64,000 nt of DNA from Auanema rhodensis (GCA_964057225.1 OZ059896.1:16120001-16184000); one strand, 5' to 3'; positions 40,114-49,382 are shown, counted from the stretch's first letter. Notes: generated by a model from the sequence alone, not told the origin. Program-made: numbers and translations.

Positions 40114-41357
40114 GCTGCTGGCGATACTGATGCTGTTGTTGGGTTATGAGCGGGGTGCGTTGAGCGTACTTCACAAATCAACAAATATCATTTTTTATTT
40201 TGAAAATTTATATTTACCTCCGCCTCATCACAGAATTGAAAGCTTAACAGCTTGAAATGAATGCTGTGTTGAGGCTAATGAATTAGAATGGATATATATA
40301 TATATCATTCTGCATGTATTATAAACCTTGCTTCTAGTGTAGCATATCTGCGTCTTTCATACGGGTTTTTTTCTTAACAAGCCCTCCCATTTATACTACC
40401 ACCTACTTTTACTATTACTACTGCTATCTATTTATATCACTAATTACGGAAGATCCTTTGTAATACAAATTATTTTATTTCGTATTTTATATCTAAATAG
40501 CCATTTATATTCGACGTTTTTTCCTTTCTCCACTTCCTTCATCATAATAATATTTTTTCCCCAAAAAAGAACATATTTTGCTATAATTTGTTAGAAATTC
40601 TGTATATGGTGCATGCTGAGTTATTTAAATATGTATAAGAGTGATTTTCTAGAATATGTGTTTTGTTTATCACATTACTTATGTTTCCACATATATTTAA
40701 AAGAAATACCTTTTCCTTTTATTTAAATGTTCTTTTAAAAATATTCTGTAGAAGTGAGTGGTATAACATAGTTCACTTAAATATAGTAGTACAAAGTAGT
40801 ACAAAGTAGTTTAGTATTAGAACAAACATTTACTCTTTTGTCATGATATATTCCATTTATTTTCAGATATTTATCTTTAATTCTTTTTCATATATTTTAA
40901 AAATTGGCATAAGTTTATAACATTCAGATCTGAAATAGGCTGTGTGATCTGAGAGAAATGACTCGTAATGACAATACACGAAACATATGAGGTGATTTAG
41001 ATGTTTTGAGTATACAAACAAACCAACTTAACAGTGAACGACAAAAAGAGAGCCACGAAGCTAAGAGAAAGAGAGGGAGAGAGAGAGAGATAGTGGGGTG
41101 ATGGTTAAGTGAAGAAGCTTCATAACTTGTTTTTGAGATAAGTAGAAAGTGGAAATTGCAAGGTGAAATGATGAAGGGGAGAGAGCAACGAGGTGTTATG
41201 CGAGTAAAATTTAATTTTCAGGCATTTTGTTGTTGATATTCAGGTGGAAAATAATTTTAACAGTGATACTATGACACCATAACTTAGACGAAAGTAATTC
41301 GGAGAATATGATATAGAGATTTTGGCGATTAGCTGGCTAATTTGATTACCAAAGTTA

Positions 41358-44300
41358 TTAACGATGTGAATACCTGATTCAAAGAAAATCATAAAAGAAA
41401 TTAAAAATAGCAAGTTTGATGATTATTCTCGATCAATATATTCCCTATAAATGGGCAAATTAACCATATTTGCTAGAGAAAAATGAGATGCTTACATGCT
41501 CATATAGTTATTAACTAAGTAGGATTGATACTGAGGGGTTGGTGGCATGTATCTCAAGATATTCAGTACATCAGTTGGAGTTTTGCCATGTCGTTTCATC
41601 AGTCTTGACAATTCAATTTCAAATGGCTCTTCCTGTATGTAAATTTTAATTTCAATATTGAAAAAAGATCACGAACTGGAATTGGCGGTTCATATGAAAT
41701 TGGTAAGAGGTTTGTATTTCCTGATGACAGTTGACTTTGATAACTAGAATGATGCGAAAGTGGTCCGTGATGGTTACGAACTAGATCAGAATCTAATGTA
41801 GGAGTTGAGGCAGTAGGAGGTGGAGAATTGAATGTGGTTAAGCACGTTACTACAGCTATTCGAAGAGGAGCAAAGCTAAAACATGATATTAGCATATATG
41901 AGATCACAAATTATACAACATTACCTAACATCTGTTACATTTTCAATTGGTCCACCATGAGTAATATTAGAAAGAACAACTTTTTCCTACAAAATAAATG
42001 TATAAAATATAACGATTTGAGCTTTTAAACAAGCCTTAATCTTATTCTGAGTTAATTTATATCGAGTAATTAGTTCTTGAATACTAACAAGTTCATTTCT
42101 TGCTGTTATAACATAATCTATCTGAAAAAATGGAAGTTTATATCATAAAAGAAAAGGAAAAGTTATAGAAACCTTGGATGATTCAGCTATATCTACCATA
42201 TATTCAAAAATACTTTTAGCTTGTAACCGCTTCAAGTCTATTGGCTCTAAATGTACAACAATTCCCTGAGAATTTTTGATTGTTATACAAATACTTCCTA
42301 AAAAATTTTTTTATTATAATTTAAAATATAATTATCATTTAAATTATAAGAAATATAATTAAATATAAATAAAAAATTATAGAAACCTCCTATTACATAT
42401 GAAATTCGTAAACACATCACAGATAAATGTGGTTCCATTAAAGTTTCAATCTAAAATATTAATATTTGAAAATGAAAAGAATATGTAATGGACGAACCAC
42501 ACCAATATCATTAAAACCTAATAAGATATGATCATTCCACAAAGTTCGTACAGTTGTTCGACCATCTTGATAAATTTGTAAAACTTCTAATAATCCTGAG
42601 AACATAAAGTATAATTAATATAATTATATTATAATAATTATCTTTACCTCTCCATATACTGAATCGCATTTGATTACTATCGACATCATACCGTAAATGA
42701 GGACATAATACGTTCTTGAAAGTTACAAAACGTTCTCTATCTGAATTCATGTGTTTTGAAATATGAATATTTTGAGGAAAGTTGGGTTTACCTGGTTGTT
42801 GAACGCCAGTTCTACAGTAATCACATTCGAGCTTCTCCTCCAAAAGTTGAAAGTCGGAGTCAGATAGTGGACGTTTGACGGCAGCATTCACCAGGAAATA
42901 CGATGTGTAAAGTTTGACAAATCGAGACCACTCAACACCTAAGAATAGTAACATATCTGTTTAGTTGAAGAGCTTTTACAGTATTATCTACAAATAATTT
43001 TTATTTTGAGTATAAAAAGTACCTTTTGCACACCAATTCAATATTAATCCCTCAACGTTACGTAGACCATACAGCCAGAAGCATGTAGCTGTATATGAAC
43101 TCATCATACGTTGAACTTGACAATCCTAAACAACTGTTGAGTTAGTCATCTTAATTCCTGTCAACTAAACCTGATTTCTACGAGTAGCGATAGTAAAAGG
43201 CAATGATAATGTTCTCACATAACAAATATCACCTGAGGGCCCGAACATCATACCACATGTATAGAAGTAGAAAAGTGGTCGTTTGCCAGTATTTGCAAGT
43301 CTTGTATCCAATAGCACCGTATCCTATCAACAAACAGTTGCCAATTAATGATTATTTTTGAGAAATAATACCTTTTGCCTTGTTGTGCAAAGTAAATGAG
43401 GATAGTGGGCTTGCCAACATCCATTTTGCTCATCCCACGATGGTTGAATGGATACAGACTCTCGACTGTTCACATCAGACTTCTTATGAGCTGTATTTCC
43501 TCCATCTATTATAATATTAAGAATATAAATAATGAAAATATTGATGAACTAACCAGCATTAGCTGTAGCATTATTGCGTTTAACGCCAGAAGTTGGTTTA
43601 ACTGCTAATAAAGCAGCCGAAAGAAAAGTACTAGGGAGTGTTTGTGTAATATATCCTCGACGTGTTGAAATAACATGATTCTGAAATTGAACAACAATAC
43701 AAAGTTTAATATAATCATTTAATTTAATGAATAGATTCAACCGGATGCACTATTAATTGTTTATAAAATGAAACTTGAAAGGAATGACGTCAACGCCACG
43801 TGATTCACAACGTGATCTTACTACACAAAACGAGATAAATATTTATCAAGTAAATCATTATTTTCAAGTTTTTCGTCTTACCTGAATTCCTATTGCAGTA
43901 TCTTCGCTTACTATTTGAACATCAAATTGTTTAAATATGAGGCCAGGAGCTAAACTGGCACAATGGAATGGAAAAAGATTGTTCGTCACTAGTATGGCAG
44001 TTGTAGAGGGCTTAGTAGGTAATAAAGCATCACATACTAAGCGTTCAACAACATTGTAAACCTAGAACAAGAATCCATACATGAAGCATGTTTCGGCCGA
44101 GATCTTACCGTCTTGATTACAGAGCCCACAGGGTCAGGACGCGAAAATCTACTTTTTGACTGGCATGCTTCCCAGCGGAGACCCTAGAAATGATGTTGTC
44201 TCTGGTTTTGAAATGAGAAAAAGCAATAAATACCTACCTGTAATCGTGCAGCCAGTATACCTAATGTATAAAGCATATTACTAAAGTAAGCACATGCCAT

Positions 44301-46959
44301 ATGAATAGCTTCAGTATCTAAATCTGCTTTATTCATCATTCTATCAACCTGTGATAACCTGAAATGAGATGATTGAGCTCAGAAAATGAAGATCACGCTG
44401 TAAAACCTCAGCTTTCGAAGAACTTTAGCATGATTAGATATGCATATATCACTGAATAACTGTAAATATGTAGCTAACTGAAATTATAATGATCAGGAAA
44501 AGATGCAAGTTTTTTTTATTCTACTTCACAAGCTGCAAAATTTTCAATTGCTGATTCAACCAGATTAGATGATCGATCAACTTGGGAATACAAGTCGTGA
44601 AGTACATTGAGTGTTCTCTGATGCTGCTGAAATAAAAAATGTTTTACTACTGAAACGATAGTTTTGTCTAAAACCTCCCAAAATGTTCGCCACTCAGCAG
44701 AATTAATGTCCACAGTTGGTGGTACAGACACATGTCGACTCTACACAAAAATTATATAATATATTAGAAATATATGTATAAATATTGTTTGTATAAACCT
44801 TATTAACAAGCATAACAAGATTTTGATTTAATTGCATTTGAACATGCTCCTCATTAGCTGTTAAGGAGCGAGCTGATAATCTATTCAGGATAGATAGTAA
44901 TGGCCATGTAATCATACACCATTCTTTCTCAAAATGTTCTGTTGTCATACTCTGACTAATGGAAAATAATTCTAAATAATGAAAATAAAAAATTATAAAG
45001 CATAATCATATAACAAACCTTCTATTTTAGCATTATATTTCATAATTAACTGAGTACAGTACTGCATAATAGTTTCAGACGTTTGCATAAAGCTATGTGG
45101 ATTTGTAGTGCTCTCATCTTGAGCTCGTTGTAAAGCGGTAATCTGTAATATCCATATATGATCATATTCTTAAGAACTATACATAACTAGTATAAACATG
45201 TAAATTACAAGCTAATATATTATATTATTATAGTTAAATGTGATAATTGAATAATATATATATAAAGAGGTAATAATTTTCATATCATTTTCGAATCTAA
45301 GTGCCCTTCAACTTTTTATATTTTTATCTTTATTATTGCTCCTCAATAGCTTAATTTTCTATATTATCTTTGTTATATTCTTCTTTTTACTCCACTCATT
45401 CATATTTCTATTCAAAAACATTTTTATTACTGAATAATTGGATAGAATATTCGAGAAAGTATCGAGAAACGTTTGAGGATCACACATAGAAGTGATGCCA
45501 AGCCAACTGCCACAGCTCATATGTTATCATATTGCTTTTTCATAAACATGTGATTGTTTAAGTATACATCATGTTAATGAGCAAGATTATGAATGAGATT
45601 AATTGATAAAAAAAATCTTTAAGAATATTATCAATATCGTTTGAAAATTAAAAATAATTCTGGAAAATATTGAACGAATTGTGATGAGGTCTTCTTATAA
45701 ATTGAATTAGAATCAAAACAATCGAACAAGGATTTGAAGAAAAGACGAAGGTCATGGTTTGAAAACGAAAAAAACCAACATCGCAATTTGAAGACGATGC
45801 TTTTTTCGACGAACATAGAACATTGAGAATTAGAAAAGCCGGTAGTTGTATTTCCCTCAATTACAAATTTAATAGACCATTAAGTGATTGAAATGATTTG
45901 CAAAATGCAACATTTTTCTTGAAATATCTAGAATATTCACCAGGAAAGCTTTTAAAAACGGATGTTTTCAGAGACAATGTTTCAAAATCACATCATATTC
46001 GTATCAGATTCTAAGTATTTTCTCAGTACATGGAAACAATCACTTATGCAACGTGGCTTTTACAAAGGTGCTGCTATATCATTCTGCTCATCGATCTTCT
46101 ATCAGCAAAGGAAGTTATAAACATATCAAAGCAATGATCAAATGATTATTTGAGGAAAAGGGATAATTTTCTTTTTAATTTCGTCATGGAATAGAAATTT
46201 ACATTTCATTTACTTATTTAAATAGAAAAATAGTTATTTCTTGTTGAAGAGTACAAAGGAACCATGAATGTATCAAATATATATATAATCAATAATCTTT
46301 TTCCTCAAAAAGCGAAATAAAATACTTGTTTCCATCAAATAATTTAGAATGTAATATTTATAAATTTACTCTTGTACACTTATAATAATAAAAAAATGTC
46401 TAATATAGCCTCAGAATGTTGTTTTGCTTTTAAATTGTCATTTCAACACAATAGGCATAAGCGTGAAGTTGTAGTAACATCACGTGAATCATACACTTCC
46501 ATTGTCAGGAAAAAATCAAAAAGATGGAAAAGAAGCTTCGTTTTAGTAGCGAAAAATTCTTGTTCGTAGTATGATTTTGAGGGAGAAAATGAGAATAAAA
46601 AAGATTTTAACGGAAGACAAATTGCCAAAAGCATCACCTAGTTTTGAGGAAGAACATTAACAGATTGATGAGCAATAATCATATAAAATATCTATATATC
46701 TTCTGGGCAAATGACGAAAATGGCAAATGATGGGAACGAGTTTGAATAGCAATAAACTGAAACAAATCAAGCTGTTAAGAAGAAATAAGAATAAAACAAC
46801 ATTAAACTAAGAACAAATATGTTTGCAAGAGATAAATATGAAGAGAAAATATTGAAAAACTAAGAAATAAAAGAAAAATATGAAAATTTTGATGTTTCTT
46901 ACCAGATCATGAATTAATTTTTGAAAAGATTCGTATATCGGCTGGGCCGGAGTTGTCAT
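41358..46959 (-). CDS. Divergent STAT-family protein (coiled coil, DNA-binding, linker, SH2)
   Basis: [14 protein letters not shown]...YTATCFW...VEWSRF...[15 protein letters not shown] and FSIWRGLLEVL...[10 protein letters not shown]...[14 protein letters not shown] parallel STAT5 TLSLPVVV...ATVLW...RGLTKENLVFLAQKL and WNDGAILGF...LLRFS...GGITI. The start (MTTPAQ) is tentative. Confidence 0.8.
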
Positions 46960-49382
46960 ACCGCATCCAGAAATAGGTGAATACTTGCTTACTAGCACTG
47001 ACAGCCTTTCTTCTTAAAACTCTGAACATGGTATATACTACTTGAAACTGATAATATATATATATATATATATATAAAGAGAGAGAGAGAGAGAGAAGAT
47101 AAAAAGAAAAAGAAGAATTAGATAAACAAACAAAGAAAAAAACAAAGTTGGGAATCAAAGTTTATAAAAATGAATTTCAAATTGGACTTATTAAAAAGTA
47201 AGTAAAACTAAAAAAAGATGTATGGTTATTAGAAAAAAAAATTTTTTAAATTTCAGATAAAAATTAGTACCAAGCAAAAAGTCATGAAAATTTATAGTTT
47301 ATGAATAGAATAATTAAAACCCATTAAAACGAAGCAATGCAATTCATCTATAAACGATTATACAGTAAAAGGATTATTCATTTAGGGTTCGTACTTTGCC
47401 TGATAGTAGCATCCGGTTAGTTAAGCTTTAGCTTTATTATCAATGAAATTTGTATGATGGCATGGATTCTATTTGGTGCAATACGGCTGAACAGTTAACA
47501 GGAAAATTATTTTAAAAAATCTAATCCATGCTATAGGGCATAACTAGAGCAAGTTAAGGTTTTTAAACAATTTTGAGACATAGCATCAGATGAATATAAT
47601 ACTTTATTGAAGATGCCACGTTGCTGCATTTTGAACTACCAAATATTTCATATCTTATATCTTGTCATTGTCAAAATGGAGACATGGTTGACGTTGAAAA
47701 ACTGATGGAGAGCGGAACCAATGATGGAACGACGTTCAGCCATCCAACTTTAGAAAATAAAAAATAACACAAAAATGATATAATTAGTAAGGTAGAACGA
47801 GAAAGATCTAGAATACTAAATGCCTTAGATTAAATTCACCGACTATTTCAGCTTACCGCAAAGTTTTCAAATCGTTTTGATAAGAGTGAACTGGGTGGCG
47901 CTTTGGCCTTAGTGATTGTCGTATCATTTCCTAACAATAATCGATAATTTTGCCCTAACTATCAATCAAACAATCAGATGAAATAAGAAAAAGAATAAAA
48001 AAAAAGAAGAAGAAGAAGGAGATGAAGACGAAGACGACTACAACTATGGTTATGAAGACAACTACGGGCAAAGATTACAGTGTCAGATGGCTCGTTGCCC
48101 ACATTCAAACTGTTTGTCGGATATCATAACGGGCACTACATCTGATGAAAGACATAGCCTTCGTGAACTAAACGATCCGGTAGAATGGAATTCAATTCGG
48201 ATGGAGATAGATATGATAAAACAAAAAAAGTGACTAGTTTTAACATCAGGAAAATCGAGACCTTAAAACAGACACATACGCATACATATACAAGAGAGGA
48301 CCGGGAAATCAATAGAACAGGCCTATTGATAAGCCGGAATGAACTGGATGAACATTCCAACTATCATAAGGAACAACCAAAACAGGCGTGTTTCCACGGT
48401 CTTTCTCGGTACATTGTCTACTATTCTCTTCTCTGCCTATCTAGTGATCAAGTATCACCCCTGAAAGACGGGTTTATGCTGAGTTTGTGAGAGCTGTCAC
48501 TCTCTCGGTAGGCATTTACTGAACTCATCGAATGACAACAAAAACAAAGAAGAAGAACAATCCGATATATAAGAGAAAAAGAAAAGAAATACAGTTGGTA
48601 TGAAGAAGCAAGGTGTATTCGGCTTGGTCTAGGAGTTAATCTTTACATAAATATCTTGTCTGGCTTTGTAAAAGTAAAAGGTTAACCACTGAGACGAATG
48701 ATTGTTTCGATAAGGTAAGATGATTAGAGCGATTTGTCTGATTTATGATCCTTAATATGGACATTTACAAGTTATCCCAATAAACTAATATGAAGATTGG
48801 AGATTGGAGACTAGGTCAACGGAACAAAGAGCAAGATTGAAAAATATCATAATAATGGAATATATTAAGTATTAAAGCAAGAAGTTACATTACAAGTTGT
48901 TTTTGAAACAGTTTTCTCAATTGTAAAACGTTGCATTTTTGGGAAAAATTTAAATCATGTTCAACGTAAGCATGTAAATGCTCTTCTGAATTTTTCTTTA
49001 CTAAAAAAAGTTTTAATCTTCTGATACTGTACGGAGAAAGCAGACATTTCAGTAATTACGATGCCTTTCGAACTAAATGACAAAAAGAAAAACTTTGAAA
49101 TGCGATTATCAACCTTTGGAGATCAATTGTGTTATTCCTGAAGTAGGAAGTGAAATTTATAGAAAAATTTTAAATAATTTCCTTTTAAATATTATAAAAT
49201 TTATGTATTTATTCTAATGTTCTTACAAAATTTGAGGAACCGTAAAACGGATACACCTAGTAGTTTTAGTATAACAACAACAAATAACAATATGGAATAT
49301 AACAAAACATTTGAAATATCAACAAGATAAAAATTTGGAATTAAACTTAACAAACAATCTTTAACAATACAGTTAATTCATA

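What the first reader, a model, noticed from the sequence alone, without database searches (positions are those of the whole stretch)
41358..46959. Divergent STAT with Phe at the activating phosphotyrosine position
Seen: after the SH2-like domain, which keeps the Arg in CLRIS (FLLRFS motif), the protein reads [15 protein letters not shown] (Phe codon 41872-41874). Canonical STATs, including C. elegans STA-1, have G-Y-(I/V)-x-x-x-I/L at this position. The DNA-contact segment is also remodelled (TIATRRNQ versus VIVHGSQ). Inference: a STAT that cannot dimerise through pTyr, which may act phosphorylation-independently or as a decoy or adaptor, and may be distinct from sta-1 and sta-2.
Basis: partly seen in the sequence, partly recalled or inferred. 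Interest (0 to 1): 0.72.

Follow-up and report, generated by a model that had tools for sequence, protein, structure and literature searches.

The report
Phosphotyrosine-less STAT-fold gene in nematodes
This worm gene makes a complete STAT-shaped protein whose usual on-switch tyrosine is a phenylalanine. It belongs to an unstudied family kept in two copies across rhabditid nematodes (C. elegans C27D8.3 and T12G3.2), in addition to the two STATs the field counts.

Summary
Window 41423-46959 (minus strand) is an expressed gene of 22 exons encoding 855 aa. Spliced transcript contigs from four runs support the shown splice joints, including the exon that starts at 41875 with the Phe codon at 41874-41872.

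Pfam does not recognise the protein. Other evidence shows a STAT:
- A family profile hits only STATs in the PDB (STAT6, E 7e-5).
- AlphaFold models of the closest orthologue and of the C. elegans paralogue match STAT cores (Foldseek E 1e-15; Z 19.6 and 22.6).

The gene is neither sta-1 nor sta-2. A canonical STAT with a GY tail lies about 1 Mb away. The C. elegans relatives are the uncharacterised C27D8.3 (this gene's type) and T12G3.2.

The Phe is a family trait (57 of 62 sequences). It sits in a near-invariant tail motif, F-T-x-x-R-[IV]-A-V-V-T-C, and no tail tyrosine is conserved. The SH2 Arg is mostly kept, but the second phosphate-binding Lys is hydrophobic and the phosphate loop is two residues shorter.

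My best reading is a STAT hard-wired to work without tyrosine phosphorylation. The mechanism is inferred, not shown. The joined spliced model was not searched or folded.

The parts
41423..46959 (-). Whole coding region: 22 exons, 2568 nt, 855 codons plus stop. ATG is at 46959-46957 and TAA at 41425-41423.
   Evidence: Exon arithmetic and splice signals. Spliced transcript contigs. Exon-by-exon tblastn of orthologue P0001.
46903..46959 (-). Exon 1, N-terminal helix
   Evidence: 90% identical to P0001 residues 1-20. Transcript depth in bin 46839-47000.
45019..45142 (-). Exon 2, N-terminal helical region
44799..44971 (-). Exon 3, N-terminal helical region
   Evidence: Contig pieces 44799..44971 in all four runs
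44525..44740 (-). Exon 4, coiled-coil region
44407..44477 (-). Exon 5, coiled-coil region
   Evidence: Found only through the orthologue alignment; frame check
44238..44358 (-). Exon 6, coiled-coil region
   Evidence: Joint 44182|44237
44109..44183 (-). Exon 7, end of coiled coil
   Evidence: Joints 44059|44107 and 44182|44237
43882..44061 (-). Exon 8, start of the Ig-like DNA-binding domain
   Evidence: Contig pieces 43882..44059; 97% identical to P0001
43554..43680 (-). Exon 9, DNA-binding domain, with the near-invariant basic loop (K-P-T-S-G-x-K-R)
   Evidence: Joints 43680|43882 and 43505|43554; column counts
43372..43505 (-). Exon 10, DNA-binding domain, with the loop [11 protein letters not shown]
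43171..43323 (-). Exon 11, end of the DNA-binding domain. It ends in [12 protein letters not shown], the remodelled DNA-contact segment (43194-43171).
   Evidence: The family profile aligns this segment with STAT6 L-S-L-P-L-V-V-I-V-H-G-N-Q-D.
43023..43125 (-). Exon 12, invariant loop and first linker helix
42792..42938 (-). Exon 13, linker domain (R-P-L-S-D-S-D-F motif, shared with the genome's canonical STAT)
   Evidence: Pfam STAT_linker E 0.09
42648..42740 (-). Exon 14, linker domain
   Evidence: Joints 42740|42792 and 42594|42647
42498..42595 (-). Exon 15, end of linker and start of SH2 (W..G-F, helix A)
   Evidence: Joint 42450|42498; alignment to the STAT6 SH2
42387..42450 (-). Exon 16, SH2 strand B with Arg639 (codon 42408-42406) in C-L-R-I-S
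   Evidence: The Arg aligns with the Arg of F-L-L-R-F-S in STAT6, STAT5 and the genome's own canonical STAT.
42173..42297 (-). Exon 17, SH2 core
42035..42121 (-). Exon 18, end of SH2. It is followed by a GC-AG intron (41987-42034).
   Evidence: Joint 41985|42034 skips 48 nt with 3 nt of slack; donor GC
41925..41986 (-). Exon 19, first strand of the tail hairpin (S-N-I-T-H-G-G)
41677..41875 (-). Exon 20, tail motif [11 protein letters not shown] with Phe738 (TTT at 41874-41872), then a low-complexity region
41496..41632 (-). Exon 21, conserved C-terminal two-helix module
   Evidence: Contig pieces 41495..41631; model pLDDT 87 at P0001 residues 790-812
41423..41444 (-). Exon 22, the last 6 codons plus the stop
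   Evidence: Contigs cover 41300..41444, and the X1 contig runs on 589 nt past 41495. Frame check.

Best explanation
SHOWN. The locus is an expressed gene for an 855-aa protein. It is the C27D8.3-type member of a family found across rhabditid nematodes in two ancient paralogues, C27D8.3-type and T12G3.2-type. The protein has the STAT core in STAT order: helical coiled coil, Ig-like DNA-binding barrel, helical linker and SH2. After a short beta-hairpin comes a near-invariant tail motif, F-[TA]-[PA]-[LM]-R-[IV]-A-V-V-T-C. Phe stands where canonical STATs have the activating Tyr. The hydrophobic +5 and Val +8 of canonical tails are kept.

INFERRED. This is a STAT hard-wired to work without tyrosine phosphorylation. 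The tail is still a docking strand for an SH2 domain, most likely the partner's as in the parallel STAT dimer. Phe fills a pocket that kept the Arg but lost other phosphate-binding parts: the helix-A Lys is hydrophobic and the phosphate loop is two residues shorter. Dimerisation would then be constitutive, or controlled by something other than a tyrosine kinase. The invariant basic loops of the barrel (K-P-T-S-G-x-K-R; H-K-K-S-D-V-N-S; T-R-R-N-Q-D) suggest sequence-specific DNA binding with a specificity different from canonical STATs. I put about 0.9 on the identity and about 0.35 on the constitutive tail-SH2 mechanism.
For: Expression and gene model:
- Spliced contigs in four runs, 15 joints shown, no mismatches.
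- Frame and splice check of all 22 exons.

Family:
- The orthologue P0001 was found with the linker exons.
- 114-117 relatives, all named ones rhabditid nematodes, none with a Pfam domain. C. elegans members are C27D8.3 and T12G3.2.
- The window's genome has both types.

STAT fold:
- The family profile against PDB sequences hits STAT6 at E 7e-5.
- With the SH2-plus-tail profile, the top 18 hits are all STATs.
- AF2 model of P0001: pLDDT 81.9, pTM 0.78.
- Foldseek: the top 46 hits are all STATs, best E 1.5e-15.
- VIA: Z 19.6 over model residues 128-731.
- T12G3.2 model: Z 22.6 to STAT5B.

Tail:
- F in 57 of 62 sequences; T724, R727, A729, V730, V731 and C733 are invariant or nearly so.
- No conserved Tyr lies outside the SH2 core.
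- The genome's canonical STAT reads G-Y-I-Q-S-E-I-V-M-V, with the same +5 and +8 pattern.
- The last aligned residues of phosphorylated STAT1, STAT3 and STAT6 chains fall 8-10 residues after the Phe in one model and 5-9 in the other.
- The tail after the Phe is invariant yet has low confidence in both monomer models. That is expected for a strand that binds a partner.

Pocket:
- The Lys of G-F-I-S-K aligns with F, T or I, and the loop after R-x-S is two residues shorter.
- The SH2 Arg is R in 55 of 62. Three panagrolaimid sequences have Tyr at both the Arg and the Phe positions.
Against:
- The structural register of the tail differs between the two models, placing pTyr 1 to 4 residues before the Phe.
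- HMM alignments stop before the tail, and hhalign of the canonical tail exon against the family gave nothing.
- The Arg/Phe co-variation rests on a single clade. Other lineages change one position alone.
- The window's protein has Ala where 61 of 62 relatives have Thr after the Phe.
- No DNA-binding, localisation or genetic data exist for any member in the searched literature.
Confidence: 0.6

Rival explanations
1. The Phe and its hairpin are a structural element packed in cis on the protein's own SH2 or linker. The protein pairs, if at all, through other surfaces, such as the antiparallel coiled-coil-to-barrel contact of unphosphorylated mammalian STATs. The tail-SH2 exchange is lost.
For: Both monomer models build a beta-hairpin that ends at the Phe, with moderate confidence (pLDDT 65-76). 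Canonical STATs are disordered there. Latent mammalian STATs do form dimers without pTyr (general knowledge; PMC10200994, title and abstract only, listed).
Against: The most conserved part, R-[IV]-A-V-V-T-C after the Phe, is not placed with confidence in cis in either model (pLDDT below 50). Yet it is invariant, which fits a partner-binding strand better.
Confidence: 0.2
2. The SH2 domain still reads phosphotyrosine on another protein, such as the canonical STA-1-type STAT or a receptor. The protein would then act as an adaptor or as a dominant-negative decoy that cannot itself be activated.
For: The Arg of strand B and the following Ser/Thr are kept in most members (R in 55 of 62; S or T in 62 of 62). 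A canonical Tyr-bearing STAT exists in the same genome.
Against: The helix-A Lys is replaced by hydrophobic residues and the phosphate loop is shortened. The Arg is Tyr or His in seven otherwise well-conserved sequences. A mere decoy would not need invariant DNA-contact loops or an invariant tail.
Confidence: 0.12
3. The protein is a cytoplasmic scaffold that no longer binds DNA. It would be regulated by sequestration, as reported for C. elegans STA-2 at hemidesmosomes and on SNF-12 vesicles.
For: STA-2 is a precedent for a Tyr-less STAT-like protein controlled by location (PMC4681281, PMC5587905). The DNA-contact segment differs from canonical STATs.
Against: The barrel loops that face DNA in STATs are the most conserved parts of the family and are rich in Lys and Arg. 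N-Q-D of the contact segment is retained.
Confidence: 0.07
4. The locus is a decaying STAT copy or a gene-prediction artefact, and the Phe is a random loss.
For: Pfam models fail on every exon and on ten full-length relatives.
Against: The gene is transcribed and correctly spliced and has an intact frame. Relatives reach E 1e-236, and dozens of columns are invariant across three nematode clades.
Confidence: 0.01

Closest known systems
Mammalian STAT5 and STAT6 (and STAT1, 2, 3) core structures
   Same: The same four domains in the same order: Z 19-23, 420-490 aligned residues, 13-16% identity. The SH2 Arg, the S-L-P strand and N-Q-D of the DNA-contact segment align. The tail keeps the hydrophobic +5 and Val +8.
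   Different: - Phe instead of the activating Tyr.
- The helix-A Lys is hydrophobic and the phosphate loop is 2 residues shorter.
- Arg-Arg stands where STAT6 has His-Gly, and a 7-residue insert follows N-Q-D.
- There is an extra hairpin before the Phe.
- The first ~120 residues are long helices with no match to the STAT N-domain.
- All Pfam STAT models score below threshold.
C. elegans STA-1 and its orthologue in this genome (G000:C4:17164675-17166218)
   Same: A nematode STAT without JAK. The linker motif R-P-L-S-D-S-D and the SH2 core align. Both lie on the same contig.
   Different: The canonical gene is seen by Pfam STAT_bind, STAT_linker and STAT_alpha. It reads V-H-G-S-Q-D, G-F-I-S-K and F-L-L-R-F-S-D, and has a G-Y tail. 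STA-1 needs that Tyr for function (PMC13344970). The window gene is a different locus about 1 Mb away.
C. elegans STA-2 (F58E6.1)
   Same: A nematode STAT-like protein reported to lack the tyrosine motif (PMC5587905; PMC3670131).
   Different: STA-2 has 567 aa and is reported to lack the coiled coil. The window protein has 855 aa and about 270 helical residues before the barrel. The C. elegans relatives of the window gene are C27D8.3 and T12G3.2, not F58E6.1. No hit named F58E6.1 or STA-2 was among the named hits, although its length was within range. I could not fetch a STA-2 sequence for a direct comparison.
Engineered Tyr-to-Phe STAT mutants and unphosphorylated STATs
   Same: The same substitution at the same place. 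Such proteins keep some functions without pTyr (PMC4772975, abstract only, listed; PMC13344970 for STA-1 Y588F).
   Different: There the change is a loss-of-function tool. Here Phe is the conserved natural state, inside an invariant motif, with a remodelled pocket.

Membership tests
STAT superfamily (fold level) | Helical coiled-coil domain directly before the DNA-binding barrel | tested here: met
   Structural alignments start at model residues 124-128 against STAT residues 125-140. Helices span residues 133-271 of P0001.
STAT superfamily (fold level) | Ig-like DNA-binding barrel ending in the S-L-P strand and DNA-contact loop | tested here: met
   Continuous alignment through the barrel. The profile aligns L-S-L-P...N-Q-D with STAT6, at a weak domain score.
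STAT superfamily (fold level) | Helical linker domain between barrel and SH2 | tested here: met
   Pfam STAT_linker gives sub-threshold hits (E 0.09 on the window exon, 0.005 on P0016). The region is covered by the structural alignments. The R-P-L-S-D-S-D motif is shared with the canonical STAT of the same genome.
STAT superfamily (fold level) | SH2 domain with the strand-B Arg | tested here: met
   The SH2-plus-tail profile hits STAT6 at 6.6e-5, STAT5B at 5e-4 and STAT5A at 3e-3, with Arg on Arg. The window's Arg639 is at 42408-42406. R is found in 55 of 62 members.
Canonical STAT (functional definition) | Activating tyrosine a few residues after the SH2 domain | tested here: not met
   Phe in the window gene and in 57 of 62 relatives. 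No conserved Tyr anywhere in the tail.
Canonical STAT (functional definition) | Complete phosphate-binding pocket (strand-B Arg, helix-A Lys, full phosphate loop) | tested here: not met
   The Lys position is F in 35, T in 10, I in 7 and K in 2 of 62. The loop after R-x-S is two residues shorter than in STAT5 and STAT6.
Canonical STAT (Pfam definition) | Scores above the gathering threshold for STAT_bind, STAT_alpha, STAT_linker or SH2 | tested here: not met
   No family passes on any exon or on ten full-length relatives. A genome scan with PF02864, PF21354 and PF01017 found only the other locus.
Canonical STAT (non-nematode) | N-terminal STAT interaction domain | tested here: inconclusive
   Residues 1-120 are four long helices that match only generic helical proteins at Z 8-10. 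The region was not folded alone. Nematode STA-1 is reported to lack this domain as well (PMC3670131).
C27D8.3 / T12G3.2 family (nematode, unnamed) | Full-length similarity with the invariant motifs (H-K-K-S-D-V-N-S; T-R-R-N-Q-D-C-Q-V-Q-R-M; F-T-x-x-R-I-A-V-V-T-C) | tested here: met
   Window exons are 61-97% identical to P0001 over the core and 40-59% in the tail. P0001 hits C27D8.3 at 2e-198 and T12G3.2 at 2.7e-169. P0001 falls in the Rhabditina C27D8.3-type clade, with support 100.
STA-2 (F58E6.1) orthologue | Short protein (567 aa) without a coiled coil; best C. elegans match F58E6.1 | tested here: not met
   The window protein has 855 aa and a long helical N-terminal half. The best C. elegans matches are C27D8.3 and T12G3.2. 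No direct alignment to STA-2 was possible.

The most novel reading that the evidence does not exclude
Rhabditid nematodes, C. elegans included, carry a second STAT system that the literature has missed. It consists of two ancient paralogues (C27D8.3-type and T12G3.2-type) that form hard-wired, phosphorylation-independent dimers. A Phe-bearing tail strand docks into a de-phosphate-adapted SH2 pocket, and the dimers bind DNA through invariant basic loops with a new specificity. C. elegans would then have four STAT-fold proteins, not two, and nature would have made a constitutive version of the pTyr-SH2 switch.
Probability: 0.3. Interest if true: 0.85.

Novelty: new variant of a known kind. Interest (0 to 1): 0.68.

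Why it matters
[quoted passage not shown] One comparative study even reports no STAT detected in Nematoda (PMC13203501). This locus points to two more STAT-fold genes that standard domain models miss. They are far better conserved than STA-2 and have clear one-to-one relatives in parasitic and plant-parasitic nematodes.

They offer a natural experiment on what a STAT does when the tyrosine switch is replaced by a fixed aromatic residue. This bears on the debated functions of unphosphorylated STATs. The question is directly testable in C. elegans, where both genes (C27D8.3 and T12G3.2) are uncharacterised.

Tried and rejected
- **Exon-wise Pfam scans.** These gave only STAT_linker at E 0.09. 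Pfam on ten full-length relatives gave nothing usable. The STAT assignment therefore could not rest on Pfam.
- **STA-2 orthologue hypothesis.** I held this after reading PMC5587905 and then rejected it. The C. elegans relatives are C27D8.3 and T12G3.2, and the protein has a long coiled coil.
- **hhalign of the canonical STAT's tail exon against the family profile.** No alignment resulted. The SH2 exon aligned only weakly, at E 0.04. HMM alignments to PDB STATs stop before the tail, so a sequence-statistical proof of the Phe/pTyr register was not obtained.
- **Reading the register from structural alignment ends.** The two models disagree by 1-4 residues.
- **Maximum-likelihood tree.** The default method did not finish in 300 s, so I used FastTree. 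The tree is unrooted, with no canonical STAT outgroup, because no full-length STA-1, STA-2 or other STAT sequence could be fetched by reference.
This is shared only with the closest orthologue and is not a conserved column.
- **Tools and searches that gave nothing.** Searches for the C. elegans gene names and accessions found no paper on either gene.
- Exons were searched by reference and the orthologue P0001 served as proxy.


Full report
**1. What is in the sequence**

On the minus strand between 46959 and 41423 there is a gene of 22 short exons. I derived the exon borders by hand. I then checked each exon separately for frame, stops and splice signals.
- All introns are GT-AG except one GC-AG intron at 41987-42034.
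- The exon lengths sum to 2568 nt once exon 21 is ended at 41496. That is 855 codons plus a stop.

Four public runs from one study hold spliced contigs of this gene.
- The 15 joints shown all agree with the model.
- They include 41875|41925, which opens the exon carrying the Phe; the GC-AG joint; and a 51-nt in-frame intron (42741-42791) that is spliced out.
- No base differences were reported.

The tool labels these runs 'RNA?' as a guess. The fact that the contigs lack every intron is what shows they are transcripts.

- TTT at 41874-41872 follows the split Ser codon and is followed by [10 protein letters not shown].
- The SH2-like exon reads C-L-R-I-S, with Arg at 42408-42406.
- The exon ending at 43171 ends in T-I-A-T-R-R-N-Q.

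**2. What the protein is**

Exon-by-exon Pfam scans gave only a sub-threshold STAT_linker hit at E 0.09. Instead I searched the two linker exons by reference (window:42535-42960, minus) against the representative library.

The best hit, P0001 (836 aa, Auanema sp. JU1783), aligns exon by exon with the window:
- 61-97% identity over the core;
- 40-59% identity in the tail.

It serves here as the orthologue proxy.

With P0001, the word-index search found 114 relatives. With a 62-sequence profile it found 117.
- Every named hit is a nematode of Rhabditida (spirurine, tylenchine and rhabditine lineages).
- None has a precomputed Pfam domain of its own; the few Pfam entries lie in fused or over-long gene models.
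- The list stops sharply at E 2e-73, with nothing else up to 0.01.
- Most species have two members.
- The C. elegans pair is C27D8.3 and T12G3.2, both labelled uncharacterised.
- The source names ('protein kinase domain-containing', 'integrase catalytic domain-containing' and so on) disagree with each other and with the empty Pfam column, so I treat them as annotation noise. One Ditylenchus record is named STAT1.

**3. STAT fold**

- Sequence profiles.
  - A profile of the family against PDB sequences hits STAT6 at E 7e-5.
  - A profile of only the SH2-plus-tail part puts 18 STAT entries on top: STAT6 6.6e-5, STAT5B 5e-4, STAT5A 3e-3, then STAT2, STAT1 and Dictyostelium STATa.
- P0001 model.
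  - AlphaFold2 on the family alignment with P0001 first gave pLDDT 81.9 and pTM 0.78.
  - In Foldseek against the PDB, the first 46 hits are all STATs, with best E 1.5e-15.
  - VIA-align gives Z 19.6 (rmsd 5.2 over 418 residues) for STAT6, spanning model residues 128-731.
- T12G3.2 model.
  - A second model with T12G3.2 first (pLDDT 73.3) gives Z 22.6 to STAT5B.

All four core domains are covered. The first ~120 residues are extra long helices with only generic matches.

**4. Not sta-1, not sta-2**

Scans of the window's own genome with Pfam STAT_bind, STAT_linker and STAT_alpha found one locus, C4:17164675-17166218. It lies about 1 Mb from the window gene. Its exons read as a textbook STAT: V-H-G-S-Q-D, G-F-I-S-K-Q, F-L-L-R-F-S-D and a tail G-Y-I-Q-S-E-I-V-M-V.

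The same genome also has the T12G3.2-type paralogue at C4:10486274-10490047. Its tail reads R-F-T-A-M-R-I-A-V-V-T-C. In that paralogue an intron appears to sit one base before the Phe codon, as in the window gene. I read this from the sequence, without transcript support.

STA-2 (F58E6.1) is described as a 567-aa protein reported to lack the coiled coil and the Tyr motif (PMC3670131; PMC5587905). No hit named F58E6.1 or STA-2 was among the named hits, although its length was within range. I could not fetch STA-1 or STA-2 sequences by reference, so there is no joint tree.

**5. The tail and the pocket**

- Phe column. In the 62-sequence alignment it is F in 57, Y in 4 and C in 1.
- Following residues. 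T is found in 61, R in 62, A in 61, V in 60, V in 62 and C in 58.
- Tyrosines. No Tyr column outside the SH2 core reaches even half of the sequences. Only 9 of 62 sequences have any Tyr within 12 residues of the Phe.
- Pattern. The family motif F, +5 I/V, +8 V, +9 T mirrors this genome's canonical tail Y, +5 I, +8 V. From my own knowledge it also mirrors the STAT1, STAT3 and STAT5 tails.
- Structure. The last aligned residue of phosphorylated STAT1, STAT3 and STAT6 chains (9-11 residues after pTyr) pairs with residues 8-10 after the Phe in the P0001 model and 5-9 after it in the T12G3.2 model. The register is therefore known only to within 1-4 residues, and no Tyr lies in that span.
- Confidence. 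The strand after the Phe is invariant but has low confidence in both monomer models. A hairpin leading to the Phe is moderately confident.
- Pocket. The strand-B Arg is kept in 55 of 62 sequences and the following Ser/Thr in all. The Lys of G-F-I-S-K aligns with F, T or I, and the loop after R-x-S is two residues shorter than in STAT5 and STAT6.
- Where changes occur. All changes at the Arg or Phe positions fall in the faster-evolving C27D8.3-type sequences. Three panagrolaimids have Tyr at both positions; Aphelenchoides has His/Phe; Mesorhabditis has Tyr/Phe; Diploscapter has Arg/Tyr. The Tyr/Tyr pairing is one event, so it is a hint of contact and not a test.

**6. DNA-binding surface**

The most conserved stretches of the family are loops of the barrel and the segment that follows it:
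- K-P-T-S-G-x-K-R;
- [11 protein letters not shown];
- [26 protein letters not shown].

The profile alignment puts T-R-R-N-Q-D on STAT6 V-H-G-N-Q-D, with a 7-residue insert after it. The score of that stretch is weak. That the His-Gly-Asn region contacts DNA in STAT6 is my own knowledge and was not tested here. These loops have low model confidence despite being invariant, which fits a surface ordered only on a ligand.

**7. Reading**

Shown:
- an expressed, intact gene;
- a STAT-fold protein;
- membership of a discrete, deeply conserved nematode family with two paralogues;
- Phe in place of the activating Tyr as the family norm;
- a pocket missing two phosphate-binding elements;
- separate from the canonical STAT locus in this genome, and not matching what is reported for STA-2.

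Inferred:
- the tail remains an SH2-docking strand, with Phe as a fixed substitute for pTyr;
- this gives constitutive or otherwise-regulated dimers that bind DNA.

The rivals are cis packing with other dimer surfaces, a pTyr-reading adaptor or decoy, and a non-DNA scaffold. They are listed with their tests.

**8. Novelty**

- No paper in the searched library mentions C27D8.3 or T12G3.2 in its main text.
- Wang and Levy 2012 call F58E6.1 the second-best STAT match in C. elegans after STA-1.
- A June 2026 preprint still counts two STAT homologues.
- A 2026 survey reports STAT not detected in Nematoda.

Supplementary tables, WormBase text and structure-based database annotations were not searchable here. 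One automated record already uses the name STAT1. The family may therefore be flagged somewhere without having been studied.

**9. Limits**

- The window's own joined protein was never searched or folded.
- All fold evidence comes from the orthologue (P0001) and the C. elegans paralogue (T12G3.2).
- No multimer modelling and no model coordinates were available.

Noticed in passing
window 41987-42034 (minus strand): A GC-AG intron of 48 nt between exons 18 and 19. The transcript joint fits it within the 3-nt slack reported.
   Followed up: yes
window 42741-42791 (minus strand): A 51-nt intron that is in frame and free of stops, so the six-frame ORF reads straight through it. It is spliced out in all four runs. 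If retained, it would add 17 residues to the linker domain.
   Followed up: partly
G000:C4:10486274-10490047, window (C4:16161423-16166959) and C4:17164675-17166218: The T12G3.2-type paralogue, the window gene and the canonical STAT all lie on one contig within 6.7 Mb. In C. elegans, both C27D8.3 and T12G3.2 sit on a record of 17,493,829 bp. From memory this is chromosome IV, which also carries sta-1.
   Followed up: partly
window 41496-41632 (exon 21); P0001 residues 790-812: A conserved C-terminal two-helix module (invariant F and L, near-invariant G-K; pLDDT 87) set apart from the core by a disordered stretch. It has only marginal profile hits: MvaT at E 0.018 and a UBA-like domain at E 0.53. 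Its function is unknown; it could be a transactivation or partner-binding module.
   Followed up: no
window 41871-41869: The window protein has Ala right after the Phe, where 61 of 62 relatives have Thr. In C27D8.3-type relatives the motif is F-T-P, a possible proline-directed kinase site. This species lacks it.
   Followed up: no
L004 2664-2709 and window 41876-41924: From the sequence, both paralogues appear to have an intron one base before the Phe codon (phase 2), which suggests the position is old. The canonical STAT has no intron at its G-Y.
   Followed up: partly
window 45143-46902: The first intron is 1.76 kb, more than eight times longer than any other intron of the gene. It has no transcript coverage. 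Its content was not examined.
   Followed up: no
window 47060-47100: (TC)n and (TA)n microsatellites lie about 100-140 bp upstream of the start codon.
   Followed up: no
family members in public databases: Source names for family members are mutually inconsistent: protein kinase domain-containing, integrase catalytic domain-containing, CULLIN_2, NR LBD, PINc, UL46 and others. No such domain is recorded for them. These look like automated naming errors.
   Followed up: no
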